A DNA stretch of 64,000 bases, taken from contig NW_027266319.1 of NCBI RefSeq assembly GCF_022045235.1, forward strand, positions 40,486,001 to 40,550,000, in the 5' to 3' direction. Positions 2,441 to 45,468 of the stretch are shown piece after piece. The DNA comes from Haliotis cracherodii. Lineage: Eukaryota. The notes under the pieces were generated by a model. It saw only the letters and a list, made by a program, of their open reading frames with translations, had not been told where the DNA came from and searched no databases. A program made the translations under genes and the position numbers. Numbering within the stretch: the first letter of the stretch is position 1; the number at the start of each line of letters is the position of its first letter.

Positions 2441-3483
2441 CGNNNNNNNNNNNNNNNNNNNNNNNNNNNNNNNNNNNNNNNNNNNNNNNNNNNNNNNNNN
2501 NNNNNNNNNNNNNNNNNNNNNNNNNNNNNNNNNNNNNNNNNNNNNNNNNNNNNNNNNNNNNNNNNNNNNNACATCGACAAATTTGCCTTGCTCCAAATGT
2601 GAATCAACTGGTTATTAAATCAATCATGTCCGTATGTGCTCTTACGAACGTGGATTTCTAAGACGAACAGAAAGGGCTTTCAAGTGAGGAAGCGAGGCAT
2701 AAATGAGGCATAATTATCTGACGATGAGTGAGGTGAAGTGAAATGGGGTTGAACATGGCGTCCTTGCTGACTACAAGTATACTGACTCCGAGCCGACCAG
2801 GCCTTGTTTTAGCCCCTTAATGCCGAGCGCCAGACAGGGTAACAGCAAGTATCATCTTTAAACGTCTTTTGGTATGACGCGGGCGGACGCTCTACCACAA
2901 GACCACGGAGGCGGTCTCTACAAAGTATACAAACAGGTTGACATTTCCCCTTGTTTTACATAACGTATAATTATTTTTGTTTGTTTGTTTGGTTGTTGTT
3001 TAACGCCGCACCAAGCACTATTCCAGCTACATGCCACGGTCTGTAAATAATCGTGTATGGACCCGACTAGCCAGTGATTGACATCATGAGCATCGATCTA
3101 CACAATCGGGATACGATGACATGTATCAACCAAGTCAGCGAGCCTGATCACCCGATCCTTTTGTCGCCTCTTACTACAAGCGTTTATGCCTGTTACGGCA
3201 AGCATGGTTGATGAAGACCTATCCTACCCCGACCCTTTACAGGCATAACGTATGATTAGGTATACGATGTAAGTGGCTAAAACACTCGTATCCACAGATT
3301 GTCTATGTTTCCTTCTAACATACAATCTTGTAGAAATTTAGTTAAGAGCTTATTGTCTTGTCAGGCTCTTACCTGTTAATGTTACATTTTTCTCTATCAT
3401 TTAATTTGAATAATCAGACAAAGAAAAAGAGTGGACAAAGAGATTCTATCGCTGTATCAGACTAACGTGTTTCGAGTAAACGA

Positions 3484-3989: not shown

Positions 3990-5670
3990 AAGTATGAAGT
4001 TATACCCATATACTGATGCTACATGTATGTACTTATACTCATATGCTGATGGTACATGTATTTACTTATACCCATATGTTGATGGCACATATATGTCCTT
4101 ACACCAGTATGCTGATGGTACATGTATGAATGTATACCCATATGCTGATGGTACATGTATGAATGTATACCTATATGCTGATGGTACATAGATGTCCTTA
4201 CATCAATATGCTGATGGTACATGTATGAATGTATACCCATATGCTGATGGTACATGTATGAATGTATACCTATATGCTGATGGTACATAGATGTCCTTAC
4301 ATCAATATGCTGATGGTACATGTATGAATGTATACCCATATGCTGATGGTACATAAATGTCCTTACACCAGTATGCTGATGGTACATGTATGAATGTATA
4401 CCCATATGCTGATGGTACATAAATGCCCTTACACCAATATGCTGATGGTACATGTATGAATGTATACCCATATGCTGATGGTACGTGTATGAATGTATAC
4501 CCATATGCTGATGGTACATGTATGAATGTATACCTATTTGCTGATGGTACATAGATGTCCTTACACCAATATGCTGATGGTACATGTATGATTGTATACC
4601 CATATGCTGATGGTACATAAATGTCCTTACACCAGTATGCTGATGGTACATGTATGAATGTATACCCATATGCTGATGGAACATGTATGAATGTATACCC
4701 ATATGCTGATGGTACATGTATGAATGTATACCTATTTGCTGATGGTACATAGATGTCCTTACACCAATATGCTGATGGTACATGTATGAATGTATACCCA
4801 TATGCTGATGGTACATAAATGTCCTTACACCAGTATGTTGATGGTACATGTATGAATATATACCCATATGCTGATGGTACATGTATGAATGTATACCCAT
4901 ATGCTGATGGTACATGTATGAATGTATACCTACATGCTGATGGTACATGTATGAATGTATACCCATATGCTGATGGTACATGTATGAATGTATACCTATT
5001 TGCTGATGGTACATAGATGTCCTTACACCAATATGCTGATGGTACATGTATGATTGTATACCCATATGCTGATGGTACATAAATGTCCTTACACCAGTAT
5101 GCTGATGGTACATGTATGAATGTATACCCATATGCTGATGGTACATAAATGTCCTTACACCAGTATGCTGATGGTACATGTATGAATGTATACCCATATG
5201 CTGATGGTACATGTATGAATGTATACCCATATGCTGATGGTACATGTATGAATGTATACCCATATGCTGATGGTACATAGATGTCCTTACACCAGTATGC
5301 TGTGGGTACATGTATGAATGTATACCCATATGCTGATGGTACATAGATGTCCTTACACCAGTATGCTGATGGTACATGTATGAATGTATACCCATATGCT
5401 GATGGTACATAAATGTCCTTACACCAATATGCTGATGGTACATGTATGAATGTATACCTATATGCTGATGGTACATAGATGTCCTTACATCAATATGCTG
5501 ATGGTACATGTATGAATGTATACCCATATGCTGATGGTACATAAATGTCCTTACACCAGTATGCTGACGGTACATGTATGATTGTATACCCATATGCTGA
5601 TGCTACATAGATGTCCTTACACCAATATGCTGATGATACATGTATAAAGTTTTACCCATTGTTGATGGTA
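3990..5670. repeat. 33-bp minisatellite with two interspersed unit types, ~50 units
   Basis: Constant atgctgatggtacat followed by either gtatgaatgtatacccat or aRatgtccttacaccaRt. Confidence 0.95.
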
Positions 5671-9050: not shown

Positions 9051-10734
9051 TAGTCTCTGACTCTTTGTAGACCCATTCATCAGCAAATGTGACTGGCGTC
9101 ATTTGATTTCTTTCAACAACACATTCCCAATAAACCAGTGACGATCGTCGTTGTAATTGGTCTTCAGCAACCCATGCTTGTCGTAAGAGGCGACTAACGG
9201 GATCAGTTTGTCAGGCTTGCTGTCTTAGTAGATGCATGTCATCGTATCCCAATAATGTACGCGTAGATCGATGCTCTATGACATGATTAGCCCATCTGGT
9301 CTGACATCTTCTCCTAAGACATCACTGAACCAATCAAGCTTTCAATGAGACATGATAATTAAGAGAATGTTTTGCAAAGTTTATTTTGTGAACTTGAATT
9401 ATCCTATATTTGGACCATACTCCTAAATTCTTTGCAAATGCATTCTCTGAAAAAAATGCCCTTTTCGCGAACACCTGGCATGACCACTGATTTTCGGTGA
9501 TCCATTCCTATAGTTTTCACTGCTATTTGGCCTTTTATGCCCAATAGAATCTGTTTTTGTCAGATAATATTCTCTTGTGGTTTACGTTTTATATTATATT
9601 TTTGCATCATCACCCGAGACAGAAATGATGCAGTGAAGCTGAAATTTTCCAATCTTGATGATGACCCAATTTGTTTAAGAGGTCAAATCTAATTGGGATC
9701 GGGCGGTCAGAGTGCTTGTCATCGTATCCCAGTTGCGTGGATCGATGCTTATGATAATAATGACTGGATTGTCTGGTCCAGAATCGATCATTTGCAGACC
9801 GCTGTCATTTAGCTGGAATATTGCTGAGTGCGGCGTTAAACAAGAAACACGAAATAAAACAAACAAACAAACAAACAAACAGCTCCAATGGTTTCCTACT
9901 GAGGGGCAAGAAATCTTCAAAATCAAGTCTTTAGAATTATATCTCTGGCGATGGTCTGAATAACTTGAACAGGAAACATCTGATGTCCGCAAATTGTCAG
10001 CATATAGATTTATCATAAAACTATCACAAACATCGACAATTCTGCCATCGATAGGCCGCTGTCCCATGTGTACATTAGGATCCTGTCACACATGTTAACT
10101 CTTCCGTGACTCATCCATCACATTACTGGTACTTCATAGTGTGGTTACTGTGTGAATTATATATTTGTTTGCCGTATTTCAATCAGCATTACATGACTAA
10201 TGAATAAAGTTAAATAATAAAAGCGTATCACTTTCTGAATGGCTTATGATTCCTTTGTCAAGGATAGAATAGTGTTCAGAACAATAACCAGTTGTGAACA
10301 CCTGTTCGGCTGTTATAGCTCCCTTTCTTGTAGTTTCAACATTGTGAAATCGTTGCCCTGATATTGTTTTTACACAATGGATCTTCTTACTATTCAAATT
10401 CAGTTTGAGTCAGTTTAGCCAATGGACCATCCATTCATCATGTGTTTACTAATCCTGATCTGAGAGTTTATAGGTGACACGGTATTACATGCTGCATCTC
10501 TGACCACAGACATATTTGTGTAAGTACCACCGTGCGCTGAAGGCGACTAGAAGCACCAAGCAGGACCGGTCATAGTAAAAAGGTAAGTAATTAGAATACG
10601 AGTATAGATTCGAGAAAATGCAAAGGTCGGTTGAGTTTCAGTATGGGAATTGTGCTTTAAAGGAAAAGATTACCTATTGAATATGTAATATAAACGCGAC
10701 AACGTCCCTCCAATGATTCCACAGTGTTTTCAAT

Positions 10735-11279: not shown

Positions 11280-11555
11280 TGTTTGTTCACTTGTTTTTTT
11301 TGTTTAACACCGCACTCAGCAATATTCCAGCTATATGACGGCGGTCTGTAAATAATCGAGTCTGGACCAGGCCACCACCCAGTGATTGATATTATGAGCA
11401 AAGATCCATGCATTTGGGATACGATGACATGCATCAAGCAAGGCAGTGAGTCTGATCACCCGATCCCGTTAGTCGCCTCTCACAACTAGCATAATCGTCT
11501 CTTACAGCAAGCATGGGTTGCCGAAGACCTATTCTACCCCGGATATCCACGGGTT
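11280..11555 (-). mobile_element. Family 2 short retroposon (non-tRNA structured head, (AAAC)n tail), representative copy
   Basis: Shared body gggatcgggtggtcagRctcgctgacttggttgatRcatgtcatcgtatccca...gctggaatattgctgagtgcggcgttaaac. Other copies or fragments at ~2976-3244, 9135-9275, 9695-9880, 13685-13835, 14315-14420, 15133-15378, 15379-15553, 17355-17590, 29238-29450, 30655-30878, 32123-32280 and 39165-39300. Confidence 0.85.
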
Positions 11556-14200: not shown

Positions 14201-15604
14201 TTCCTGTATATTTTCAGGTGAACACGTGACTTGCATTTGCATGTGTTTGTGACAATTCTCAGAGTACGCTATCATGTAATATTCCCGCTATGTGACGCTG
14301 GTCTGTAAATAATGCGCATGATGTCAATCACTGGATTGTCTGGTCCAGACTTGATTATTTACAGACTGCCGTCATATAGCTGGAATATTGCTGAGTGTGG
14401 CGTTAAACGACAAACAAATCCATCAAGCGAGTGAGTGAATGAATGAGTTTAATAGTTTTGATGAGATGGGAATTCTGAAGGGATGCAGATTTTAGACGTT
14501 TGACACGAGCACAGGTATGGTTCTGTCACACCTGGAAAAATAATCAGGGCGAATGTAAGAGTCGAGCCAGCAATCATAGGATTCTGCCACGCCTAAGGGA
14601 CGCAACTCTGTGCAAGAAATTCCGGTGCCTTAGACGACTGGGCCACCTGTGTCCTTTCATATAATGACACCGCCTTTGAAGTATTCATGTCTGCATATGA
14701 AAGGACTCATTAACGAACCAAAGACTGCTTCTCGTTAGCAAATGACAGTACATGATCCCTTATTGTCAAGCCGCCATTGTTTTAAATACCCTTTTCCGGG
14801 GAGGCATCAATATTTACTATCAATCAACCCAAGGGATAGAGCACACGTGCCATTTTATGAATGGTTGCCACAAAACAAGACACTCTGTAAACACCGTGTA
14901 CATGGCTTTAAGTCGGCAGTCCAAGTCCTTCGTTCATGTTTTAAGATCAAAGCTCCAAAACATCACTTAATCGTATTTGAACATGTAATACACGACAGTG
15001 TCACAACGTAATGAATTGTATTCCGTTATTTGTTAAGTTCGAAAAGCTAAACACATTTGAGTAAATGCAACCTGTCCTTTGATTTGCGCCCAATTTTTTT
15101 CTCGCCACGTCTGTGACATTTCCGATAGGAAAACGCCGCACTCGGCAACATTCCACCTATATGATGGCGGTCTGTAAATAATCGAGTCTGGACAAGATAT
15201 TCCAGTGGTTGACACCATGAGCATCGATCTATGCAATTAAGCTACGATGACATGTATCAACCAAGTCAGTGAGACTGACCACACGATCCCGTTAGTCGCC
15301 TCTCACGACAAGCATAGTCGAATTGTACGGCAAGGATGTGTTGCCGAAGACCTATTCTACCCCGGATCTTCACGGGTCTTGTCGAAAGAGGCGAATAACG
15401 GGATAGGATGGTCAGGCTCGCTGACTTGGTTGATGAATTTCATCGTATCCCAATTGCATGGATCGATGCTCATGATGACTCGATTATTAACAGACGGCTG
15501 TCATATAGATGGAATATTGCTAAGTGCGGCGTTAAACAACAAACAAACAAAACGTCTCTGCTATGGTACCTAATTAGCATATGGTCATGACCTCATAACA
15601 GTGA

Positions 15605-16441: not shown

Positions 16442-19005
16442 TTTGTGTTTACGTACTAAGAATACGAAACCAGTTATTGCATCAAATGGTTTTGGCTTGA
16501 GTAGAGTGTGGTTTGAGAACGACAATGCGGCCCTCTTCACAGTTTCCACCAGAGGCACACAAAAAACCGTTCTTCTTAACAAACACACTGACACCACACA
16601 GGCACACAAACCACACCTACAGACACCAAAAAGTGAAAATACATATATAATTCACAGACATACATGCTCGGNNNNNNNNNNNNNNNNNNNNNNNNNNNNN
16701 NNNNNNNNNNNNNNNNNNNNNNNNNNNNNNNNNNNNNNNNNNNNNNNNNNNNNNNNNNNNNNNNNNNNNNNNNNNNNNNNNNNNNNNNNNNNNNNNNNNN
16801 NNNNNNNNNNNNNNNNNNNNNNNNNNNNNNNNNNNNNNNNNNNNNNNNNNNNNNNNNNNNNNNNNNNNNNNNNNNNNNNNNNNNNNNNNNNNNNNNNNNN
16901 NNNNNNNNNNNNNNNNNNNNNNNNNNNNNNNNNNNNNNNNNNNNNNNNNNNNNNNNNNNNNNNNNNNNNNNNNNNNNNNNNNNNNNNNNNAAAATGTGTA
17001 TGATTTTAAGCTCAAGTGTATCAATTAGCTGCTTCAGCGTTCGTGCACTTTAAGACCACATACAAACGTTAAGTCAATCACAAAGTCACTGAAACGTGGA
17101 AGTTATTTACATATCAAAGACGGCAAAATGAAAGGCATCGCTCTGTCACTCATGCAACCATTGCTGTTGTTTTTAGTCAAGCATTTACCATCCGGGAGAT
17201 AGATAACCGTTGTCTGACAACTTTAGAACTTCTGGTGAAACATGAACATGAATAGTGAGATAGAACAATTGAAGGTAAGAAACAGGATTACATGTACTAT
17301 CGATGCATATAACATAGCTCTAGAGTATACATCCTATTTGCCCCTATGCAATTTTTGTTTCTTTGTTTGTTGTTTAACTCCGCACTTAACTAAAACAGTA
17401 TTCCATTTATATGACGGCGGTTTGAAAATAATCGTGAGCATCGAACCATGCAATTGGAATACGATGACATGCATCACCCGAGTCAGCGAGTCTGACCATA
17501 AAATCCCGTTAGTCGCCTCTTAGGACTAGTTTAGTCGCCTTTTACGACAAGCACGTGTTGCTGAAGACCACTTCAAATCCGGATATTCAAACCTTACAAA
17601 ATATGGAGTGGAGTTTGCTCAGCCATAGTGATGGCACCCCACACCATAACCGATTCAGTAAATCTGTCATGACGTCTCAGGTTGACATTGACTTGACATT
17701 CATTTCGACGTCGCAGCACACGGTCACGCCTATCAGTAAGTGAGATAACATCGGCATTTTTTCAGCCATATAGCGACGAGACCCAGTTGATACATACACA
17801 GTTTGATCATTTATACAGAGTAACATTCAAAAACAATTTATGAAACCTATTTGAGGATACCATATTAAAAAAATTATGAAACATATTTGAGCATAACAAT
17901 ATCATGTGTACAGTTTTTCACGCCTGTCAAGTAAATTGGGACTCATCTGAAAACGAAATACGTGACCAGTGACGATCAACAGTTTCGACGTTGTGTACAC
18001 CATTGACGTTGGATGGCAATGTGACGATTTGTGAAGGGCGTCACAACACGTGGCCGTCGAGCATAGAGATGAGCTGCATGAAGACGATTTCAAATCGTCT
18101 GACCCGTAACTCGTACTCAAGTAGCCCGATGAAAGTTTGCGGCTATTGATTCGCCGTTTGAGCTCGATTTCGTAGGCCTGGTTTCGGATTAATCGACCCT
18201 TTACTGTTAGAGATGCCCTGGGGCGTTCTGAACGGAGTCGTTCGTGTTAGGTTTGTTGGTACCTGTTCCATAGTCTGCTGATCACAGAGAGTGTAAAACA
18301 TTGCGGAATGGCAGTAACAGTAGTATTGTAGTTCGTGGAAGTAAACATACAGTACAAGGATAGTAGATTGATCTAATTCAGCGTTATAAATATTTGAACT
18401 TGGCATTAAAACATGTTTACGATAACAAGATGTTTCTCGGATGACACATAAGTAGGATTGGAATGTTGAGGTTCATTGAAAATAGCTTAGGATCCTTAGT
18501 AACCAGGATCTGTGGTGCCGATTTCTTTGTAGGTTAAGCACCATAAAAAGTGCCTTGAGCGCAAAAACAAGAAACTTGGTCTCTATGAAATTAGATAGGG
18601 TAAGCTGCCCCGAGGAGTCATTACAATATCGATTATGACGCTATGTATTAACTTGGATGCACGGGAGAGGGCTGGGCGGTTCGTGATGGATATAGGACAC
18701 CAAGGCTGTTTTAGACACAAAAGACTGTATTTCTGTTGGTCAAGCACATGGTCAACACTCCTGGCTGGAGGCTGCCATTTTGGTACATATGGAAATAAGA
18801 AAAGGGTAAAGAAAACGAGATCGAGTATAACATAAGTGGAATTGAATAACGAAACGAAATAATAGACATTTGGGCACAAAAGGCTTTCTGACATAGTACT
18901 CATTACTTCATCTGTTATTTCTGTTCAAACAATTGTAGATAACATGTTGTTGGTTCAAATACATACATTTGCTGTTGTCTGACATTTCTATTCTTGTTTT
19001 TGCAG

Positions 19006-19520
19006 ATCAAATGAAGAAGACGACACAATGATAAAGACGACAATACGTTGATGAAAATGGCAACACTATGATGAAGATGACAACACCATGATGAAGATGG
19101 CAACACTATGATGAAGATGGCAACACTATGATGAATTTGGCAACACCATGATGAAGATGACAACACTATGATGAAGATGGCAATACCATGATGAATATGA
19201 CAACACTATGATGAATATTACAACACTATGATGAAGATGACAACACCATGATGAAGATGGCAACACTATGATGAATATTACAACACCATGATGAAGATGA
19301 CAACACCATGATGAAGATGGCAACACTATGATGAATTTGGCAACACCATGATGAAGACGACAACACCATGATGAAGATGGCAATACTATGATGAATATGA
19401 CAACACTATGATGAATATTACAACACTATGATGAAGATGGCAATACTATGATGAATATGACAACACTATGATGAATATTACAAAACTATGATGAAGATGA
19501 CAACAGCGTGATGAAGTTGA
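19006..19520 (+). repeat. 20-bp minisatellite (caacactatgatgaagatgg), ~25 units, in the apparent 5' leader of A1
   Basis: Exact 20-nt period across 19021-19500. Starts right after the splice acceptor and runs into the A1 start codon. Confidence 0.95.
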
Positions 19521-20566
19521 CACCATGCAGCAGACATAGAAGAAAGAAGGTACTTCTGGCAACAGTACTTCTGACCTGCTTCTATGCTTTTCTTCTGTGG
19601 ATCCCCCGGGACAGGAATGAAGCCAGTAACAACAGTAGCCTTGGCACAGTAAAAAAAGAGTCACATGGAAAGAATAAATTCATGGGCCTTTATTTCAAGA
19701 AACTGCTGAATCTGATCATGACTTGGTTCATTATCAAGAACGATAATCAATTGGACAAACTGTTGAACAAACATAGCTTCGTGTTTGGTTTGAATTCGAG
19801 ACAGTGTCTCAATGTTTCTATCGGTGTTTTGATTGTTGTACATTCTGATCCCAGCAATGTTGAGAAACGAAGTGTTATACGCAACACATGGGGATCAGTG
19901 ACCACGTTTAGAAATACGCCAGTTGTGTGTGTGTTCATGATGGGAGAACGAAACAACATTCAACAAGAAATTGTCCAAGAGTCCATATTGTTTGGGGACA
20001 TTGTTCAAGGGAATTTTAAAGACAGTTACAAGAACTTAACGTATAAACATGTAATGGCTCTTCATTGGGTAACTACTCAATGTCATGACGTGAGAACTAT
20101 TGTCAAAGTTGACGATGATGTGTTTGTCAATATTTTCAAATTGGTAAACTTTTCGCTAACTACTGGACACTTGCACAACAGTTTGTACTGCACAGTTTTA
20201 CAAACTGGTCGGCCATTTCGAAAAGAAGGGAAATGGATTACCAGTAGGGAGGAATATCCTTTCGAATTTTTCCCCACTTACTGTGAAGGTATGGCTTATA
20301 TTTTATCAGTGGATGAAGCAAAAAGGTTGACGAAAGCGTCTGAAAATATGCGATTCTATTGGATAGATGATGTTTACGTCACAGGTATTCTTGCACACAA
20401 GGCTGGAATTGGTCACACACAGTTGCTTGAAACACACAAATCTGCCAAAGCAGGTTTTTCAGACAATGACTATGAAAGTTCAGTAAATGATGTCCTCTTT
20501 TTCCATGATTTCAAAACGTCAGCCTCTTTATGGGAAAAGGTCAAGTTTGAGTGCTGTTCAACCTAG
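19511..20566 (+). CDS. GT31 beta-1,3-galactosyltransferase-like protein, copy A1 (~351 aa, type II membrane protein)
   Basis: ATG at 19511 (the ORF track starts at GTG 19508). Basic tail RHRRKK, TM VLLATVLLTCFYAFLLWI, and GT31 motifs VVHS..N..KR..IR.TWG, GDIVQGNFKDSYKNLTYK, KVDDDV (DxD), YP..FFPTYC.G..Y and IDDVYVTG. Branch point CTGAC 18979, pyrimidine tract and AG at 19004-19005 upstream; AATAAA at 20708. Confidence 0.92.
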   Translation: MKLTPCSRHRRKKVLLATVLLTCFYAFLLWIPRDRNEASNNSSLGTVKKESHGKNKFMGLYFKKLLNLIMTWFIIKNDNQLDKLLNKHSFVFGLNSRQCLNVSIGVLIVVHSDPSNVEKRSVIRNTWGSVTTFRNTPVVCVFMMGERNNIQQEIVQESILFGDIVQGNFKDSYKNLTYKHVMALHWVTTQCHDVRTIVKVDDDVFVNIFKLVNFSLTTGHLHNSLYCTVLQTGRPFRKEGKWITSREEYPFEFFPTYCEGMAYILSVDEAKRLTKASENMRFYWIDDVYVTGILAHKAGIGHTQLLETHKSAKAGFSDNDYESSVNDVLFFHDFKTSASLWEKVKFECCST

Positions 20567-20981
20567 ATGTGCTGTGGCTCACTCGTTGGAAAATATTTTA
20601 TGATAAAAAGAGTATTGCGTTTCTTCTCACTGGGAAGGAAATCGACAACCGTGGTTTTCTCAAAAACTCGTAATACCTTAGATTCTTCAAAATTTCATAA
20701 GACAGACAATAAATCCTTAGCATCATCAGGAATCTTGGGGAAACGGTGGACCGATAGTATGTATGCTAATTGTTTTGTGTCATTAAAACCGATCTATAAT
20801 GCAATAGAAAAACAGATATGAATACAGGGTATGATGTCGAAAGAATGTTGCTTCATATAATCATTTTCAAATCGAATCACCACACGAAGGGACAGTATTT
20901 TCCAGATTTATACATACTCGGTAATGGAAGTGTAATCCGAGGTCCAAGTGACCAACGTTGGAAGTGTACCATATGCATATA

Positions 20982-22334
20982 TACTGAACCGCAAAAGAAA
21001 CGTCACCATGGATAGATATATGAGAAACCTTATTTGTCCAAACACTGTAAACATACTTTGAGACATATTAAAAAGATGAAACTTGGCAAAACTGATCATC
21101 TAGGTTGCAATTTAAGTGTCAAATGTTCTTAAAGTGAAACACGACACTAATCACAAGTCAGTATCTCGTGTGTCTGCCATGTGCATCGATACATGGAATG
21201 GATGAGGCGGTTGATGAAGGCCATAGACACTTGAGCCCACACTCTGAAGAACGCCTGACGCAGTTCATCTGCAGTTGTCGGCCTTGATCGGACGTTATTC
21301 TGCCGTCTTTGAATCTCGTCCCACAGGTGCTAAATGGGATATAAATCGGGACTGAGGGCAGGCCACTACATGGTTCTGATGCAATTCTGCTGGAGGAAGA
21401 CTTTTGTTGTGTGTGGGCACGGGCGTTATCATGCTGAAACTCGTGGTTGCGGCGACGTGCCAAAAGTAGGTATGGCGTGTGGTCTACTGACTTGATCAAT
21501 GTATCGAATTGCTGTGACACCATTGCCTCTCCCTGGACCGATGTTCTGGAAGACCTCAGGGCCGACCCTCTGTGCAAGACCAATTCAACCCCACACCATG
21601 ATGCTTAGACCACCCCACGAATCTCTCTCAATAACACAAGCATCCGGATGACGTTCGCCACGGCGTCGCCAGACTCTCTCACTTTGCCATCTGCTGTTGA
21701 GATACAGTGCCGGCTCTCGTCTGAGAAGAAAACTCTTCTGCACTGCTAGTGGCGCCAATGCTGGTACTGTGTTGCCAACTGAAGACGGTCCCGGCGATGA
21801 CGTGGTGTCAGAATGGGTCCTCGGTGTGCCCTATGACAGTGGAGGTATATTCTCGACAATCGTCGATGCACGGTGTACGCACTAATATGTCGCTGGTGTG
21901 TCCCCATGGTCTGTCGAGCTGTTTCCGTTGGTCATCTGTACTGTTGGTGGTCTAGTACCGTGCTGGAGCCTGACTTACCTAACTTACAATGTATTGGCTA
22001 CTTGCCGGGCGGTTTGTCCAGCTTGCAATCGTCCAAGGGCTTGGTGTCGCTGATTTCTTGTCAATCTTGGCATGTGGTAGCAGCAATTCAATAGCGAATG
22101 AATGTTATCAGATCTGGGTGGATTTTTATAGGAACTCATGATCACGTGCATCGGGTTACCATGGCCGTTGCCGTGATGCATTTGGGCGATCGGTTTTTTT
22201 GTCATCTGCTGTGGGTTTTTTTCCGGACAAGGTGATGTTAAATTTGAGAAACTTTGACAAAAATTACCCAGATATATAAATGACAACTTTTCATGCAATG
22301 TTACTTGGGGTGACGTTTTTCTTGCGGTTCAGTA
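20982..22334 (-). mobile_element. Tc1/mariner DNA transposon, family X, decayed
   Basis: TIRs TACTGAACCGCAAAAGAAACGTCACC / GGTGACGTTTTTCTTGCGGTTCAGTA flanked by TA. Minus-strand transposase pieces MPRLTRNQRHQALGRLQAG and FQHDNARAH. Confidence 0.92.
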
Positions 22335-24710
22335 TATTACGCAGGTCATGAAATAAAAGTGAGTATGAACATACATGACAGAGGTTGGCAGATGTGGTCA
22401 TCGTTTTCATGTATTTTCTGATGAGCGCAGTAATCATAAATGCTGATCATATATTACCTTGAAATCCAGATGACAAGGTATTTATTTATCCCATGTTTCA
22501 TTTGTTTCTAAAAGTTCGGTCATAGGTAAATGGAAGATTACCATAATATATTGGTAATATAACTGCATCATAGTGCCAGCACAGGATCCGTAGTGTGCAG
22601 AAACCACGTCAGTGACGTGATTATTGTAATAAGTAACACATTGTAGGAGTTGTACTTGGCAGTTCTGCACTGACCGTTACCACAGATCATTAAAGTTTCC
22701 AGTATAAGCTGAGTATTTATTTGTTAACCCAGTGTGTCCATAACTTAAACGCATTTTGATGCCTAAAGTTGTCTTGAATTGTCCAGAATGAAAACGTTTT
22801 AGATTATCAAAGCAATTTGATACAATATTCAGATAATCAAGTATTTAATGTATACATGTGTTTGGATTTGACGATATTAACAAATAAGAAAATACGATTG
22901 ATCACATGAAGAAGTAAATGGTATCACACAACGATCGACATTTCTTTTAATCCTTTGTTGTCACACCTACCTACGTTATCCCACTCATGTATGTCCTTGT
23001 TGTTACTGTTAATCCTCCACTTGCTATATATATTCTGCACTATGTCCCTCATTCAGTCTTGCTGGACAACGGTATAAGGATCTATACCGAAACGTCGCTT
23101 TTTTACAGTATTAAAGAAGTTGTTATCCATAAAAAGTGTGTCTATCTTGTCATCCGCCAACTTCTAAGTAATGCCTATCAAACAAGTTATTTCTTTTTCT
23201 GACTTAGGCTTGATTCTATTTCCCCACCTGGTTCTGCAGGAGATTGATATAACGATTGTTAGAACAGAAGGTATCGTATTGACTGCAAGGCCACTATCGG
23301 CAAATGATCATGCCTTTGAAAAACAACGCCACTCATTCCAAAGGTTTGTTGTGTCAGGCATATTAACAGCAGAGAGCACTTCGGCAATGACCGTGTCTAG
23401 GTTTAGGTTCCATATGATTTCTTTGGTACAGTGTTTCCACTAAAATGCGACCGTCTCTGTGGTCAAGTGGTGAAGCAGAGAGCGGTGGTTCCGGGGATCC
23501 GCATCATGCAAAAGACGTTAAAAGCTAATACTTGTTGATATCCTGCCTGGAGTTCGGCAGTTAGGGGATAAAACAAGGACTGGTCGGCTCGGAGTCAGTA
23601 AAATTGTGTCTCTCTGGGGTATTCATGTTAAACAGCGGCATGGTATCTCAGTGGGCCAGTACAAGCAGAAACTCGGCATTAGGCCAGGATTTCGAATCCT
23701 GCCAACCTACAAGGTGCAGATTTGCGTCCCTTGGGCACGCCAGAAACCTATGATTGTGGGTTCGAATCCCGGTTCGCCCCGATTGTGTTTCTAGGTTTGT
23801 CAGCACCATACCCGTGCTCCTGGGTTTGACCGAAGTGGTAAACGTCTGAGATCTGCATCAGTTCGGGCTTTCCTCCCACATTAAGCTGACACGCCGCGAT
23901 ATAACTTGCATACTTTTAAAAGTGGCGTTAAACCCAACTCACTCACTCACTACAATTACAACACACACACAAGTGCATCAAACGTTGCTATGTAAGTGAA
24001 ATAATCTTGAACGCGACGTTAAACCTCATTTCACCTCACCTCCAACTACAAAGTCTAATCCTTGACACCAATTAGTGGAGCAGAGTACCCCTTTAACGAA
24101 CATTTTACAGCTGAAACAAAGATCACATTGTGCTAAAATGTATGAAATATCTTTTTTATCCGATAATGCAAAATAAACAAATAAGATGACTGTTTTTATA
24201 TCAGAAACCGGGTTGACTCTATATACTAGTGTCACCGTGAGTCCCTATATATAACATGGGGAAAGACAGTTCTCATTGACCCAGTCTCAATGTGCTCCCC
24301 TGATGAATAGATAATTATATCGTCAACTTGAACGTAGATGTGAAGTGGGCAAACAATAGAATTTTTAAACATTAACCGGAAAAGGACTGTTTTGTTATGA
24401 CAACGATCGTCTCAAGGTTCTTTGGTGTCTGTTACGTTTCAATCGTATACCCATGTCATAATATTGATTTGTAAAAGTGAATGTATAATACCTGCACATC
24501 ATTCTACTGCTTCACTGTCCAGATCGTATTACACTGCAAAATAAATCAATCAACTCCAGTTGTAATGATAATTTACATAAATGACACGATTGTTCAGTTT
24601 TACCATGCTTCTTTCTCTGAATATTGTAGTTAACAGTTGATATAGCGATTTATTCCACCAACTTCAGGACACTGTCGCTATGCTACGTTGGCAGGGCTCG
24701 GAACTACATA

Positions 24711-26925: not shown

Positions 26926-29479
26926 CTGACTCATATAATAGGAAGGAAAATTTTCCTTTATATATTGCCTTTATTCGATATTTTTTCATTAATTCTTCTT
27001 GAAATCGCACCCTTTTCTCCATGCTTTTGAGATTTTTGTAGAGTAGTATTTTGGTTCCAGGGGTGAGCAATTGAGACTCAGAGTGAAATATTAGATGGTT
27101 TTCGGCACCCTAAAAATGGAGAAAAGTTCACATCTTCCCTAGGCAAGTGTGTTAACTAACAACGAGAGTCCTTTCAACCCTTGCCGAACTACGCTGGAAT
27201 TTCGTGGCTCGATCGTAGCACCAGCAGTGGCTGTTACGAGTTATGTCCCTTCTATATCCCTTCTATTAACAAATCAGATTCCACCTCTAACATCATTTGC
27301 TTCAAACAAAATGGCGGCGCCCAGTCAAGATGATCTGATCGATAATCAAGATACATATTGTATCATATATAACATAGCTACGCGATAAATCGCGAAGAAC
27401 AATGAAGAACGAAGCGTGGTTAACGTTTATTTGACGATGAAACATTGTTCTAACATGACGCCATTTCTGGAGATTCGAATATGCGCTCGCGACTTGATGA
27501 CGTCATATATTTTTGGGAGGGAAGTGTCAAGTATTAAAGTTGTTCCCTATAGATATTGCAGGGCTACGCAGGTAAGGGCATTCATCGAACGATCGCATCC
27601 AAAAGTGGGAGCGATATAACAATCTGTATCAGGAGAAAAGGTGCAGATAATCGATGTGTGGATTGTGAGAATATCCGGGAAATACCAAACTTAACCCACC
27701 TGTTCGTAAAATGGACTTGTCCAACATTCCCTAAGTCGGATTCTGTTCAGGGAGACATCATTATCAAAATGTGGGTAAATATTTTTAAAGCTTGTACATT
27801 GTACATCAACATCCTGAGGCTGTACATAATGTTGATATCTCATATAAGAAATAAACGACTCATGGTCGTTGTTTTTCGTATAATAAAACGCTGCAGAGAG
27901 AATAAACCACTCGGTACTGTGTCCCTCATGGTTTATTCTCCCTGCAATGTTTTACTGTACAATGAACAACTCCCACTTGTGGTGTAAATATGCACTGAAA
28001 AAAAGCCAGCGATCTGATTGGCTATAAATAAAATATTTTTACCTCTAGGTCGTTTGCAAAATGAATGGCGCGACTTTTCTCAGTGCGGGGTATGTCAAGG
28101 CCATGGTCGTCCATCGCGGACTGGTCACGGCAAAGGACTTATTGAGACGAATAATTGAACGTAAATTCATTATACCATGACGATGGGCGGGCTGGCAGGT
28201 GCCTTCGATTGAACGTGTTTTGGCGCTTGGTATTTGTGTACACGATCCAATAAACAAAAACAATTGGTAAGTTAGCGGTAATATTCTGAGCAGGGATTTG
28301 GGTTCGGAATCACGATATTTTGAGCTTCTGAAGAGGCTAGCTCCAAAAGTACGGCTTCGAATTCTTCATCTATGTCTCACTGTATAGCTAAATGTATAGC
28401 TAAGCTGTATGCCTTTGGAAGCCATTTCCTTCTTTATTCATCTTACATGGGAAATGGGGGCTTCGGAAAAATAGCAACTTTATTAAAGAGAGAATCTAGA
28501 TTTCATAACAAAACATAAGAAAGTTATCTATAATATCACAAAGGATCTACCAGCATTGATTTCATCATATAGTAGGACCATTATTATTCTCTAATTATTG
28601 GACAAATTTTCTTTATTTTTTTACCAAATAGTATCTTTGAAAAAAACAGACTTCCAAACTGCAATTATCTCAGTACGGATGATTGCTGACTCGAAGTCTG
28701 CCTGAACCACTTCTTGGGAAAGTACTGTACCACTTCTTGTTCTGATAATGTTTTTAACATCCTAAAAAACCTTACATCAAGATCAAGATCATTGTTCTAA
28801 AGACCCCGAGCCCATATACAAAACAAGAGTAGAAAATGATCATATCAGTGAGTACAACACAGCTGTAGACACGTGCTGCATTCAATACATCTGTGCAGAT
28901 AATGTTACAAAGTGGGTGTACACAATTATTTTACGAAGTGACGTCACGATACTATAAAATTCTTGAGCAGACAAAGTGCATGATGAACAATTAGTGCTAA
29001 CCTACGACTTGTTTTCCATCATTAGAATTCAACAGAGATTTACATGCATACAAATTTTACAACGCAGGTATTTCTGTGGGATATTTGCTTCCCTTAAATC
29101 AGTATATACAGTACAAACAAGCAGTATATGAAATTTATCCTCTAAATAAGTTTGACAGAAAGGGCACAATCACACTGGCTTCGGTATAGAACGATGTCGT
29201 CCAATTTTAGCTATTATTTCAGACAATCTTCAATATGTTGGTTGGTTTGATTGTTGTTTAACGCTGCACTCGGCAATATTGCAGCTATATGACGCCGGTC
29301 TGTAAATAATCGAGTCTGGCCTAGACAATCCAGTGATTGCCATCATGAGCATCGATCCTCGCAATTGGGATACGATGACATGCATCAACCAAGTCAGCGA
29401 GCCTGACCACCTGATCCCGCTAGTCGTCTCTTACGACAGGCATAGTTGCTTTTTAGGTCAATATGCAATGCGCAGAGAT

Positions 29480-30640: not shown

Positions 30641-32804
30641 TGCATAATATATCAGCTTGCTTTCCGTGAAAGGCGATCATGCTTGTAAGAGGTGACTAAC
30701 GGGATCGGGTGGTCAGACTTGATGACTTGGTTGATGCATGTAATCGTATCCCAATTGCGTGGATCGATGTTCATGTTGTCAATCACTGAATTGTCTGGTC
30801 CAGACTCGATTATTTACAGACCACATATAGCTGGGATATTGCTGAGTTCGGCGCTAAACAAAAAAACAAACAAACAATAAATCCTTGTTATTGTGAAGGA
30901 ATGCGATGCTGTTGAATGTTGAATGTCTTATGGTCATTCTATCTGATCATTCTCTGATGATGGTCTGGTTTAAGGAAGTTATTCAATGGTTCGTTTGTCA
31001 TTTTAGGGAGGGTCGTGTTTAGGAGCAAAGTGGCCAGTCAGGCAGTTAAACACTCACGCCTAGCCTGACTCTTTCGTCATTTGGATACAGTACTAATAAC
31101 AAAACAGTAATAATGACGAGCTGTCTACGTGGACACTTATCACCTTAACACACGTGCCAACCGTGCATGACCCTTCATAAACATTTAATAAGCACATGCT
31201 CAAACAAGCATCCTCTTCGTCAGTATTCTGGAATCAATCACCATTGAAATATTTAGAGGATGAGTCTTCTAGTGATAACTTCTTTGAGAGGCATTTAGCA
31301 AAGTTGGAATACTAAGTAGGGATAAGATATATGGATGAACGACTTCTTTATTACAATTGGGAGCGACGTTTCGATGTAGGTTCTAGTGAGGCGTAGAAAT
31401 GATAAGCACCAACGGTCACTGAATCCAAAGCAGTAAGATAACACCTGTTCAACTACTGCTGGACCGGAGGGGGGAGATAGATGCTGGGTGGAGTTGACCT
31501 GCAAGGTACGGGCATCTCGGGGGCAATTCACAGTGGACTTCTACTGGAGATGTAGCAAAGGAGTGAATGATATTTTACGCCCCTCCGAATATATCAGCAA
31601 TGTCACGGCGTATGGCGGCGTGGAGGAGAAGTATTTGCACTTAGACTGACATCAGCGTGACTTGGGTGCAGTGTTTATGTAGTCATCACTTTGTCTAACG
31701 ACAAGCCTGCTGGATATCGACCGGCGTCAAATCAGACATACAGGTGACGCTTCACTGACAATATTCAGGGTGTGAGGAAGTGTAAGTTAATTACCCACAC
31801 TTCAAACTACCATGGAGTACTCAAACGATCGATGCGGTGGCCATGTATGTTTTGTTTTGTTTAACAGCGCACATGATAGTCTCTGGCATATTGGACAATT
31901 CAGCAGAGGAGGGACACGGTGGAAGGAACAGGCATGTTAAGTACAAACTTCTCAACTCGTTTCTAAGTATTTCATTTACAAACATTTCAGTCCTCCAAAT
32001 TATGTATTTTAATATCCGAACGATAAACAGTATGGTGTAACTAACAACTGTGTTGTTAGGTATTGGTAGTCAACGACTTTTTTCTATTAGGTAATCGCAA
32101 TATGTTAGTATATTTGGAATATCCAGTTAGGATTTAGCGGCAGAATAGATCCTCATTACCCCGTGCTGTCGTTAACACCGACTGTGTGACTTTGCCAGTT
32201 ATGTGCCACCGTGTCCCAACATCGTTTTGCCTGGCATAGGCTGTTGCTGTAGCTTAAATATGCGCTATAGAACAACATGATATGCTCTCATTTAAATTTG
32301 GGCTTCACTTCACTTCACAATATACTGACTCCGAGCCGACCAGTCCTTCTTTTAACCCCTTCATGCCGAACTCAAGGCAGGGTAACAACTGGTACCTTTA
32401 AAAATCTTTTGGTATGACGCGGCCGGGGATCGAACCCCGGACCTTCCGCTCCCTGTAGCCACGTTGTTAATATTTACAATAAGGTGTTATTTAAGAAGCA
32501 CCTAACTATTTCTGTCTTTGAATATTTAAAGAGAACTGAGGTTTGGTGAGGCTGGAAATGGACCCCAAAGTCTATCTAGAGATTGATATATCGTGAAAAT
32601 AGGAATGTACCCAAATTCAAAACTTCGAATTCCGTCATGCGAGTTTGAAAGGTTACGGTATCTGGTTGCTGTCATTCATTTTACAGATATACAGACGTGT
32701 TCCACAGCTAGAAACTCTTCACTCTGTAACGTCAGTGTCATCGAAATAAATATATATTTTCATTTATTAACAGATGAACATGATCACAGTTGCATTTTCC
32801 ATTT

Positions 32805-33480
32805 GATAAGTACATCCCTATCATGATAAGAACAACCCTATCAATAAGTACATCCCTACCATAATAAGTACATCCCTATCATAATAAGTACATCTCTATC
32901 ATAATAAGTACATCTCTATCATAATTAGAACATCCCTATCAATAAGTACATCCCTATCATAATAAGTACATCCCTATCAATAAGTACATCCCTATCAATA
33001 AGTACATCCCTATCATTATAAGTACATCCCTATCATAATAAGTACATCCCTGTCAATAAGTACGTCCCTATCAATAAGTACATCCCTATCAATAAGTACA
33101 TCCCTATCATAATAAGTACATCCCTATCTTAATAAGTACATCCCTATCAATAAGTACATCCCTATCAATAAGTACATCCCTATCATAATAAGTACATCCC
33201 TATCATAATAAGTACATCGCTATATATAAGTACGTCCCTATCAATATGTACATCCCTATCAATAAGTACACCCCTATCATAATAAGTACACACCTATCAT
33301 AATAAGTACATCCCTATCAATAAGTACATCCCTATCAATAAGTACATCCCTATCATAATAAGTACATCCCTATCATAATATGTACATCCCTATCAATAAG
33401 TACATCCCTATCATAATAAGTACATCTCTATAAAAAAAGTTCATCCCTATCATAATAAGTACATCCCTATCATAATAAGC
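32805..33480. repeat. 18/20-bp minisatellite
   Basis: aataagtacatccctatc with or without an extra at, ~35 units. Confidence 0.95.
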
Positions 33481-33982: not shown

Positions 33983-35044
33983 ATGGCAGTCGCCTTCAAG
34001 TACTGGAAATTCAAGAAACGTGTTTTTTGCCTTGGCACGCTGATACTAATGGGTATCTATTACGGAGCGTTGGAGTTTCGTCATTTGCAATACCGTACAC
34101 AGGAGAGGTACCTTGCAGGCAGGCTTCATTTAAGACCTCGGCTGGAAAAGAAAAGATTCGTCAACCTTTATTTCAAGAAACTGCTGAATCTGATCATGAC
34201 TTGGTTCATTATCAAGAACGATAATCAATTGGACAAACTGTTGAACAAACATAGCTTCGTGTTTGGTTTGAATTCGAGACAGTGTCTCAATGTTTCTATC
34301 GGTGTTTTGATTGTTGTACATTCTGATCCCAGCAATGTTGAGAAACGAAGTGTTATACGCAACACATGGGGATCAGTGACCACGTTTAGAAATACGGCAG
34401 TTGTGTGTGTGTTCATGATGGGAGAACGAAACAACATTCAACAAGAAATTGTCCAAGAGTCCATATTGTTTGGGGACATTGTTCAAGGGAATTTTAAAGA
34501 CAGTTACAAGAACTTAACGTATAAACATGTAATGTCTCTTCATTGGGTAACTACTCAATGTCATGACGTGAGAACTATTGTCAAAGTTGACGATGACGTG
34601 TTTGTCAATATTTTCAAATTGGTAAACTTTTCGCTAACTACTGGACACTTGCACAACAGTTTGTACTGCACAGTTTTACAAACTGGTCGGCCATTTCGAA
34701 AAGAAGGGAAATGGATTACCAGTAGGGAGGAATATCCTTTCGAATTTTTCCCCACTTACTGTGAAGGTATGGCTTATATTTTATCAGTGGATGAAGCAAA
34801 AAGGTTGACGAAAGCGTCTGAAAATATGCGATTCTATTGGATAGATGATGTTTACGTCACAGGTATTCTTGCACACAAGGCTGGAATTGGTCACACACAG
34901 TTGCTTGAAACACACAAATCTGCCAAAGCAGGTTTGTCAGACAATGACTATGAAAGTTCAGTAAATGATGTTCTCTTTTTCCATGATTTCAAAACGTCAG
35001 CCTCTTTATGGGAAAAGGTCAAGTTTGAGTGCTGTTCAACCTAG
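33983..35044 (+). CDS. GT31 beta-1,3-galactosyltransferase-like protein, copy A2 (~353 aa)
   Basis: ATG in aaaATGg at 33983. Tail KYWKFKKR, TM VFCLGTLILMGIYYGAL, and the same GT31 motifs as A1. Near-identical to A1 from 34165 onward. Candidate acceptor tttgtatttctagtttacag at 33881-33900. Confidence 0.92.
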   Translation: MAVAFKYWKFKKRVFCLGTLILMGIYYGALEFRHLQYRTQERYLAGRLHLRPRLEKKRFVNLYFKKLLNLIMTWFIIKNDNQLDKLLNKHSFVFGLNSRQCLNVSIGVLIVVHSDPSNVEKRSVIRNTWGSVTTFRNTAVVCVFMMGERNNIQQEIVQESILFGDIVQGNFKDSYKNLTYKHVMSLHWVTTQCHDVRTIVKVDDDVFVNIFKLVNFSLTTGHLHNSLYCTVLQTGRPFRKEGKWITSREEYPFEFFPTYCEGMAYILSVDEAKRLTKASENMRFYWIDDVYVTGILAHKAGIGHTQLLETHKSAKAGLSDNDYESSVNDVLFFHDFKTSASLWEKVKFECCST

Positions 35045-35769
35045 ATGTGCTGTGGCTCACTCGTTGGAAAATATTTTATGATAAAAAGAGTATTGCGTTT
35101 CTTCTCACTGGGAAGGAAATCGACAACCGTGGTTTTCTCAAAAACTTATCAGTGGATGAAGCGAAAATGTTGACAAAAGCGTCTGAAATACGCGATTCTA
35201 TTACAGTGAAGGTTTGAATATGAACGCAATGTTCTATCATGAATTAAATAATTGGACGTCATTATGGCGGATGTGTTTTGACAAAAACGTTAACCTGTAA
35301 CGAGTATATATAGTCATGTGGTATAAGTTCCAACACCCATGCAGCTATTGCATCATGGCTTTTCCTTGAAATGCATAATATTCTCCGAAAAATCCCAGTG
35401 AGAATACTCATGACAGTATTATTCATGACAGTATTATTTCATTATATTACATAATACAGTATTTTTTTCATTTTCAAACGTTTGAAGGAAACGTTAATAC
35501 ACGCATATATTTAGATAATTGCATGTCGCTGTTTATTTGTGTATAATGTGACAGAAATCATAATGATATTACTACACTTTTTACACATTTATTTGTCTGA
35601 TGATCCTCTTGTGAAGCATGTCAAGACTCATGATGAAAACAAGGCATTCCACAGTTTGCTTAAACGAGTCATGGATATGGGTCATTTTCTCAATGTCATT
35701 GTTTATTTTGTTGATGGTTCTGTACTGCTGACGGTAAGGAAATAAATGTCAACCAAGCGAGATGCGATA

Positions 35770-44905: not shown

Positions 44906-45468
44906 GTTGAGTAGTGTTGTGACTGAGTATTGTGGCGTTGTAGCTGGGTAGTATAGTGTCCTACCTGGGTATCCCAATGTTATATCTGCGTAGTGTAGTG
45001 TTGAATATTAGTTGCGTCATGGTGTTTCTGAATACAGGTTCAAATACTTAGAGGGCGACACAGGGTAAATATACATCCAAATACTTAGAAGACGATAAAG
45101 AGTAAATATACATTCATTTTGTATGACGACACAGGGTAAATACACACTCATATACATGAATGACGACACAGGATAAATATAAATTCATATACACAGAGGG
45201 CGACAGTGGGTAAATATTAATTGATGTATATAGAGGATAAATATGCATTCATTGAAGTAGATGACGACTAAGGGTAAATATACATTAATATACATAAGAT
45301 GGATACAGCTTAGGGAATTAAATATCCACATACACAGATGACGACAATGGGTAAATATATATCCATATACCTAGATGCCGACATTGGGTAAATATATATT
45401 CATATACATAGATGACGACAATGGGTAAGTATATATTCATATACATAGTTGACGACAATTGGTAAATA

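What the first reader, a model, noticed from the sequence alone, without database searches (positions are those of the whole stretch)
19006..19513. Minisatellite encodes a chain of ~22 stop/start-coupled 7-codon uORFs feeding into the A1 start codon
Seen: directly after a strong acceptor (CTGAC branch point, pyrimidine tract, CAG at 19003-19005), each 20-bp unit reads ATG ATG AAG ATG GCA ACA CTA TGA (MMKMATL*, with variants such as MMNITTL and MMNLATP). Each TGA overlaps the next unit's ATGs (ATGA/TGATG), shifting frame every unit. The last uORF (19488-19511, MMKMTTA*) stops in TGATG, whose ATG (19511) is the GT31 start, and the first codons (ATG AAG TTG ACA) are themselves a degenerate unit. 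Established: uORFs repress scanning, and AUGA/UGAUG overlaps are used in termination-reinitiation. Inference: a copy-number-variable translational rheostat on a glycosyltransferase, or a start codon recruited from a repeat. The coupling may also be a chance result of a TGA/ATG-rich 20-mer.
Basis: partly seen in the sequence, partly recalled or inferred. Interest (0 to 1): 0.78.

Follow-up and report, generated by a model that had tools for sequence, protein, structure and literature searches.

The report
Repeat-made uORF ladder before abalone glycosyltransferase
A 20-base tandem repeat that probably grew out of the start-codon region of an abalone galactosyltransferase gene puts 25 tiny upstream reading frames in front of it; the pattern is real and probably transcribed, but it looks like an automatic by-product of the repeat, not a proven dosage dial.

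Summary
Window 19011-19530 is an indel-free 20-bp minisatellite of 26 in-register units. It gives 63 upstream ATGs and 25 closed uORFs, 22 of them 7 codons long. The last TGA (19509-19511) overlaps the ATG (19511) of a 351-aa GT31 ORF.

The same 351-aa protein is in NCBI/UniRef. Its N-terminus is kept in three other Haliotis species, so the start codon is old and was not recently recruited from a repeat.

In run X1, which behaves like RNA, one contig bridges array and CDS (19466-19733). Depth covers the array bins and is zero just upstream. This fits the array lying in the 5' leader. It does not prove the exon start at 19006.

X1's CDS differs by 11 synonymous and 5 non-synonymous changes, so the gene is under constraint with the array present.

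The stop/start coupling is not beyond chance. 13.9% of random 20-mers give it, which is 42% of those holding an ATG. The third ATG is lost in 7 of 23 core units. Minisatellites fill 16.5% of the window.

The most likely reading is a neutral or mildly costly repeat that damps translation. A rheostat role is untested.

The parts
18979..19005 (+). Candidate 3' splice site: CTGAC, pyrimidine tract, CAG
   Evidence: Read directly. X1 depth is 0 at 18380-18970 and 16 in bin 18971-19167, which fits a boundary here. No splice joint to 19006 is listed. A DNA-like contig of X17 runs straight through, 18755-19078.
19006..19010 (+). Five bases (ATCAA) between the candidate acceptor and the first unit
   Evidence: Without the array, the ATG would sit 5 nt inside the exon (inference).
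19011..19530 (+). 20-bp minisatellite: 26 in-register units, degenerate at both edges, with higher-order structure
   Evidence: Self-matches at offsets 60, 140 and 200 are 87-90% identical. No array with this unit was found elsewhere in the genome. The other hits have other units and periods.
19011..19511 (+). 25 closed uORFs (63 uATGs), stops every 20 nt, each stop overlapping the next unit's ATGATG
19509..19513 (+). TGATG: the last uORF stop overlapping the main start codon
19511..20566 (+). A1: single-exon GT31 beta-1,3-galactosyltransferase-like ORF, 351 aa, with basic cluster, hydrophobic anchor and DDD motif
   Evidence: PF01762 at E 9.7e-50. The exact protein is in NCBI/UniRef. D201-D203 are invariant. 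X1 and X2 contigs lie on it.
20708..20787 (+). AATAAA (20708) and ATTAAA (20782): likely 3' end region
   Evidence: The X1 contig ends at 20771.
33984..35044 (+). A2 paralogue used as comparator: same catalytic part, other N-terminus, no such array
   Evidence: 98.9% identity over 19669-20668 against 34147-35146, with a sharp 5' edge.

Best explanation
A locus-specific minisatellite arose by tandem duplication of the roughly 17-20 bases that hold the A1 start codon and its first five codons. It sits at the 5' end of the single coding exon and is transcribed as a 505-nt, A-rich, unstructured leader.

The unit holds ATGATG, and therefore TGA, and its period of 20 is not a multiple of 3. So every copy but the last becomes a closed 7-codon uORF whose stop overlaps the next copy's ATGs. 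Only the last copy stays joined to the ORF. The ladder is a by-product of the repeat, not a selected device.

Its expected effect (inferred) is strong damping of A1 translation. All uATGs have A at -3, so leaky scanning cannot get past 63 of them. Ribosomes would reach AUG 19511 only by repeated reinitiation after very short uORFs, ending at the UGAUG overlap, or from transcripts that start further 3'. The gene remains functional and constrained despite the array.
For: - Anatomy.
- The last unit (ATGAAGTTGACACCATGCAG) is a unit lacking 3 bases and continues into the CDS.
- The N-terminus is conserved in three other Haliotis species, and the H. rufescens model starts MMK, that is ATGATGAAG.
- The unit was not found elsewhere in the 1.18-Gb genome.
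- Transcription: an X1 contig runs 19466-19733, depth is 16-20 in the array bins, 0 at 18380-18970 and 22320-22900, and a CDS contig runs 19704-20771. X17 covers the non-genic parts as DNA would.
- Constraint: X1's CDS has 11 synonymous and 5 non-synonymous changes in 863 nt, against 14 changes in 205 nt of 3' UTR.
- By-product reading: the random 20-mer rates; the internal ATG is lost in 7 of 23 core units; minisatellites make up 16.5% of the window; 5 of 12 GT31 paralogue loci have an array ending within 1 kb upstream of their first ATG, 3 of them within 100 nt.
- The leader RNA is less structured than shuffles, z +1.86.
Against: - X1's RNA status is the tool's guess, and contigs cannot show starts, strand or splicing.
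- X2 has the CDS without array contigs, and X3 has an array contig without the CDS.
- No orthologous DNA could be read, so the direction (CDS start to repeat) rests on protein N-termini only.
- ATGATG is nearly invariant in the core units, with 1 change in 23 units. This could reflect selection, though 11 of 20 unit positions are invariant.
- The array coexists with a constrained gene in two lineages that differ by about 5% at silent sites. That is also what a useful element would show.
Confidence: 0.55

Rival explanations
1. One reading: the array is a selected, copy-number-variable translational rheostat. Each unit adds one termination-reinitiation step, so allele length sets the dose of the glycosyltransferase.
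For: - The array is probably in the mRNA.
- It has strong-context uATGs and a perfect 20-nt stop spacing ending in UGAUG at the main start.
- It is kept next to a constrained gene in a second lineage.
- UGAUG overlaps are used in termination-reinitiation (passages of PMC5972666).
- A repeat acting as a uORF on FMR1 is a precedent (passages of PMC10027321).
Against: - The coupling is expected for 42% of ATG-bearing random 20-mers.
- The internal ATGs decay freely.
- There is no TURBS-type UGGGA in the leader: 0 of 505 nt.
- No copy-number data exist, since no contig spans the array.
- With about 25 steps, output would sit at the deeply repressed end, where one unit more or less changes little in absolute terms (inference).
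Confidence: 0.12
2. The array is not part of the functional mRNA. It is promoter-proximal or intronic DNA, the working transcripts begin at or near its 3' end, and the array contigs in X1 and X3 come from pre-mRNA, read-through or DNA carry-over.
For: - X1, X2 and X3 are only guessed to be RNA.
- X2 shows the CDS without the array, and X3 shows the array without the CDS.
- A conserved, selected gene behind 63 uATGs is hard to translate (inference).
- Arrays next to starts are common in this gene family.
Against: - An X1 contig bridges 19466-19733, and the array bins have depth like the CDS (16-20 against 12.5). The 590 nt just upstream have none. That pattern is not expected from DNA carry-over or from a retained upstream intron.
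Confidence: 0.2
3. The start codon and first codons of A1 were recruited from a pre-existing minisatellite that happened to lie upstream.
For: The main ATG is base 1 of the last unit, and the first 17 bases of the CDS resemble a unit.
Against: - The same N-terminus is present in orthologues of three other Haliotis species.
- The unit is found nowhere else in the genome.
- Recruitment would therefore have to be ancient, with the array persisting since.
Confidence: 0.08
4. A1 is a translationally silenced, decaying duplicate.
For: The extreme uATG load. More than 100 GT31 matches in the genome would allow redundancy.
Against: - The ORF is intact and the DDD motif is kept.
- The changes are 11 synonymous to 5 non-synonymous, with a 3' UTR that diverges faster.
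- Orthologues are 73-96% identical over the full length.
- A1-type sequence appears to have overwritten A2.
Confidence: 0.05

Closest known systems
Short-uORF control with reinitiation (GCN4/ATF4 type)
   Same: Several very short AUG uORFs lie in a leader, so access to the main AUG depends on 40S subunits that resume scanning after termination (passages of PMC5972666).
   Different: There are 25 near-identical uORFs made by one repeat, with no spacers for re-acquiring ternary complex. No known reinitiation-promoting flanks are present, and no stress logic is shown.
Termination-reinitiation at overlapping stop/start (calicivirus TURBS type; UGAUG in mouse GAD mRNA)
   Same: UGAUG and AUGA overlaps are present (passages of PMC5972666).
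   Different: Those systems follow long ORFs and need an upstream 18S-complementary motif with core UGGGA. That motif is absent here, and the upstream ORFs are only 7 codons long.
FMR1 CGG repeat acting as a RAN-translated overlapping uORF
   Same: A length-variable tandem repeat in a 5' leader is translated and lowers main-ORF output (passages of PMC10027321).
   Different: That case is a triplet repeat with non-AUG starts, one long overlapping frame and a structured GC-rich RNA. Here the repeat is a 20-mer with AUG starts, many closed frames and an unstructured A-rich RNA.
Non-coding VNTRs in UTRs and promoters
   Same: A minisatellite sits at a gene's 5' end and has the potential to modulate expression by copy number (passages of PMC12776774).
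   Different: The mechanisms seen in that review's passages are transcription-factor sites, methylation and chromatin. No uORF ladder appears in them.

Membership tests
5'-leader uORFs | Upstream AUG with an in-frame stop before or overlapping the main ORF | tested here: met
   63 uATGs and 25 closed uORFs, the last overlapping the main ATG.
5'-leader uORFs | Lies in the mature mRNA upstream of the main start | tested here: inconclusive
   An X1 contig runs 19466-19733, with depth in the array bins and none just upstream. But the run's RNA status is a guess, and contigs cannot show ends.
5'-leader uORFs | uORFs are translated and change main-ORF output | not testable with these tools
   Needs Ribo-seq and reporters.
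TURBS-type termination-reinitiation | Overlapping stop/start (UGAUG or AUGA) | tested here: met
TURBS-type termination-reinitiation | Upstream motif 1 (core UGGGA) complementary to 18S rRNA | tested here: not met
   No TGGGA and no GGG in the 505-nt leader. The motif was taken from passages of PMC5972666.
TURBS-type termination-reinitiation | Follows a long upstream ORF | tested here: not met
   The longest uORF has 7 codons.
Minisatellite / VNTR | Head-to-tail units of 10-60 bp | tested here: met
   Period 20, 25.6 copies. The size class is taken from a passage of PMC10027321.
Minisatellite / VNTR | Copy number varies among individuals | tested here: inconclusive
   No contig spans the array in any of 4 runs. 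One X3 contig fits for 156 of its 172 nt, which only hints at another unit order.
GT31 glycosyltransferase (PF01762) | Galactosyl_T domain above the Pfam cut-off | tested here: met
   169.5 bits against a cut-off of 23, residues 119-304.
GT31 glycosyltransferase (PF01762) | DxD metal-binding motif | tested here: met
   D201, D202 and D203 are invariant in the alignment. That DxD defines the fold class is recalled, not tested.
GT31 glycosyltransferase (PF01762) | Type II signal anchor at the N-terminus | tested here: inconclusive
   RHRRKK followed by VLLATVLLTCFYAFLLWI was read by eye. No predictor was run.

The most novel reading that the evidence does not exclude
The ladder is functional. 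It would be a start-codon-derived minisatellite, kept in at least two abalone lineages in front of a selected GT31 gene, that forces ribosomes through about 25 consecutive stop/start-coupled 7-codon uORFs. Heritable changes in unit number would then tune the dose of a Golgi glycosyltransferase. It would be an AUG-driven, minisatellite counterpart of the FMR1 CGG uORF.
Probability: 0.12. Interest if true: 0.75.

Novelty: new variant of a known kind. Interest (0 to 1): 0.4.

Why it matters
If the array really sits in the working mRNA, this conserved gene is translated behind 63 strong-context upstream AUGs in 505 nt. That is a natural stress test of how far serial reinitiation after very short uORFs can carry ribosomes.

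It also shows how a repeat born from a start codon can create, in one step, a heritable and length-mutable brake on translation.

If it is only a by-product, it is a caution for scans of minisatellite-rich genomes. uORF chains with stop/start overlaps arise in about one in seven random 20-mers.

Tried and rejected
- **Dispersed or TE-borne family.** I looked for the same array elsewhere in the genome. The 43 other matches are 64-75% identical. The seven loci I ran through TRF have other units and periods: 18/36, 21, 23 and a different 20-mer. I rejected this idea.
- **Array upstream of the 98.9%-identical paralogue A2.** None of this kind is there. A different array of about 20 bp lies 504 nt upstream.
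- **Older coding sequence shared with paralogue A3.** The best non-array matches to the unit core in the window are at A3 (61441-61500) and its twin (49171-49260), scoring 23 against 21 for the next windows. BLASTP of the first 81 residues of A1 against A3 finds nothing at E <= 100. I left this as a weak lead.
- **Structured leader that could support shunting.** The RNA fold is less stable than shuffles, z +1.86, so this was rejected.
- **Minus-strand ORFs of 83 and 85 aa through the array.** I took these as a composition effect and did not follow them.
- **Literature.** 'minisatellite' plus 'uORF' gave 10 papers. 'VNTR' plus 'upstream open reading frame' plus 'translation' plus 'tandem repeat' gave 15 papers. 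None of the listed titles or abstract starts is about a minisatellite-encoded uORF chain. I read only passages of PMC12776774, PMC3368165, PMC10027321 and PMC5972666. The Haliotis tandem-repeat search gave nothing useful. No supplements were opened.
- **Orthologous DNA of other Haliotis species.** No tool here holds it, so the age of the array outside the X1 lineage is unknown.
- **Earlier findings by words.** Nothing on this theme.

Full report
**What is there.**
The window comes from a 1.18-Gb genome held as 80 contigs. Its closest proteins are from Haliotis, the abalones.

TRF finds a 20-bp array at 19011-19522 with 25.6 copies and no indels. Cut in register from 19011, it has 26 units. The two at the 5' edge and the two at the 3' edge are degenerate, and the ATG at 19511 is base 1 of the last unit.

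The ORF 19511-20566 encodes 351 aa with a Galactosyl_T (PF01762) domain at E 9.7e-50. It has a basic cluster followed by an 18-residue hydrophobic stretch at the N-terminus (read by eye) and an invariant DDD.

**The uORF ladder.**
Between 19006 and 19510 there are 63 ATGs in 25 closed uORFs. Their stops are exactly 20 nt apart. 22 uORFs have 7 codons and none is longer. The three ATGs of a unit share a frame, and each has A at -3. The last TGA (19509-19511) overlaps the main ATG.

**Is it more than chance?**
The repeat is. The coupling is not. It follows from two facts: the unit holds ATGATG, which contains TGA, and 20 is not a multiple of 3.
- Of 20,000 random 20-mers with the window's composition, repeated 25 times, 33.1% hold an ATG, 26.5% give a closed chain of short uORFs, and 13.9% also have a stop/start overlap about once per unit.
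- Other arrays of this window also make dozens of short ATG-ORFs with overlaps. Examples are 3992-5670 (+), 39615-41328 (+) and 32806-33479 (-).
- Within the 23 core units, 9 of 20 positions vary. The internal ATG is lost in 7 units (TTG twice, ATT four times, ACG once). ATGATG changes once, and 11 positions are invariant in all.
- This array does have the highest ATG density of the 17 arrays tested.

I see no signal of selection on the uORF features.

**How common are arrays at gene starts here?**
Tandem arrays cover 10,586 of 64,000 bases, or 16.5%. Among 12 GT31 paralogue loci of this genome, 5 have an array ending within 1 kb upstream of the first in-frame ATG. Three are within 100 nt: A1, plus a duplicate pair with a 28-bp array 72 and 36 nt upstream. 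Those two hold only 13 and 2 uATGs.

**Where did the array come from?**
No other array with this unit was found in the genome. The other matches to it are 64-75% identical, and the seven loci checked have other units.

The exact 351-aa protein is on record in NCBI/UniRef, so the public annotation uses the same start. Orthologues keep the N-terminus:
- MMKLTPCSRQRRKK in H. rufescens
- MIQMKAPCSRQRRR in H. rubra
- MMKSPCSRHRRR in H. asinina

The last unit is a unit lacking three bases that runs on into these conserved codons. The simplest reading is that the repeat was spawned by tandem duplication of the start-codon segment, not that the start was recruited from a repeat. This is an inference. 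No orthologous DNA could be read here.

A 19-nt resemblance to an internal site of paralogue A3 is the top non-array match in the window. It has no support from protein comparison.

**Is it transcribed?**
All runs offered were Logan contigs, and their RNA label is a guess. I laid X1, X2, X3 and X17 on 17001-22900.
- **X17** behaves like DNA. It has depth on non-genic unique parts (6-26) and a contig running straight through 18755-19078.
- **X1** behaves like RNA. Depth is zero at 18380-18970 and 22320-22900, but 16, 20 and 8 in the three array bins and 12.5 over the CDS. One contig bridges array and CDS (19466-19733, 13 differences). Another covers 19704-20771, ending between AATAAA (20708) and ATTAAA (20782).
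- **X2** has CDS contigs only, at depth about 3.
- **X3** has one array contig only (19288-19443).

This fits a transcript from about 19006 to about 20780 that includes the array. It does not show whether 19006 is an acceptor or a start, and no joint to 19006 is listed.

**Is the gene alive?**
X1's long contig differs from the window at 16 CDS places, 11 synonymous and 5 non-synonymous, in 863 nt. It differs at 14 places in 205 nt of 3' UTR. The five amino-acid changes are the ones seen in protein P0122.

So a second lineage, about 5% apart at silent sites, carries the array-CDS junction in front of a gene under purifying selection.

Paralogue A2 (33984-35044) is 98.9% identical to A1 from 19669 to 20668, with a sharp 5' edge and another N-terminus.

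**How it most likely works.**
Shown:
- the anatomy of the array and uORFs
- the probable presence of the array in the transcript
- an unstructured leader, z +1.86
- no UGGGA motif of the TURBS kind

Inferred from established scanning rules and from passages of PMC5972666:
- With A at -3 on every uATG, leaky scanning cannot pass 63 of them.
- Ribosomes translate a 7-codon uORF, terminate, and some 40S subunits resume scanning.
- They reinitiate once recharged, probably skipping several units each time.
- A small fraction arrives at the UGAUG overlap and starts A1.

The net effect should be a strong brake on translation. That may be tolerable for a low-abundance Golgi enzyme. Alternatively, it may be bypassed by transcripts starting further 3'.

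**Comparison with known systems.**
This works like short-uORF reinitiation control. Its nearest repeat-based precedent is the FMR1 CGG repeat acting as a uORF (passages of PMC10027321). It fails two of the three defining features of TURBS-type termination-reinitiation.

In two literature searches I saw no listed paper about a minisatellite-encoded uORF chain. I read titles, abstract starts and a few passages only.

**Verdict.**
The feature is real, correctly described and probably transcribed. Its striking regularity is arithmetic, and a regulatory role is untested. I rate it a new variant of a known kind, with interest 0.4.

Noticed in passing
window 19669-20668 vs 34147-35146: A1 and A2 are 98.9% identical (11 differences in 1000 nt) with a sharp 5' edge inside the stem region. 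In H. rufescens the A2-type protein (P0123) has another C-terminus, like H. rubra P0003. In this genome the A1-type sequence therefore seems to have overwritten A2 by gene conversion through the 3' end.
   Followed up: partly
L018 755-1303 and L019 (reverse strand) 537-1354: A duplicate pair of GT31 paralogues on another contig carries a related 28-bp minisatellite of 20-29 copies. It ends 72 and 36 nt upstream of the first ATG of the ORF.
   Followed up: partly
window 61461-61480 and 49205-49224: Inside paralogue A3 and its twin, the coding sequence for YMMKMNK is the best non-array match to the repeat unit in the whole window (score 23, next 21). No wider homology to A1's N-terminus was found.
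   Followed up: yes
window 20979-22320 and 45466-46676: A repeated element sits directly 3' of A1, with very high contig depth in all runs. Its minus-strand ORF looks like a Tc1/mariner transposase remnant (by eye, recalled). A second copy, 81-89% identical, lies at 45.5-46.7 kb.
   Followed up: no
window 18552-18754: One DNA-like contig of run X17 skips these 203 bases, with 5 other letters in their place. A separate high-depth contig lies at 18673-18759. This is probably a small repeat insertion that is polymorphic, about 250 nt upstream of the array.
   Followed up: no
L002, L005, L008, L009 (other contigs of G000): Unrelated minisatellites with periods 18/36, 21, 23 and 20 share short cores such as ACAACACT or ATGAAGAT with this array. 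That is why they match it at 64-75%.
   Followed up: partly
window 18915-19383, minus strand: The reverse strand of the array is open for 83 and 85 codons (SSSWCCHLHH... periodic). I took this as an effect of composition, not as a gene.
   Followed up: no
window 17395-17591: A short dispersed repeat has copies at 15218-15551, 11395-11549, 29342-29461, 30658-30773, 3083-3219 and 9177-9253, and very high contig depth. It overlaps the family noted as s1-832107.
   Followed up: no
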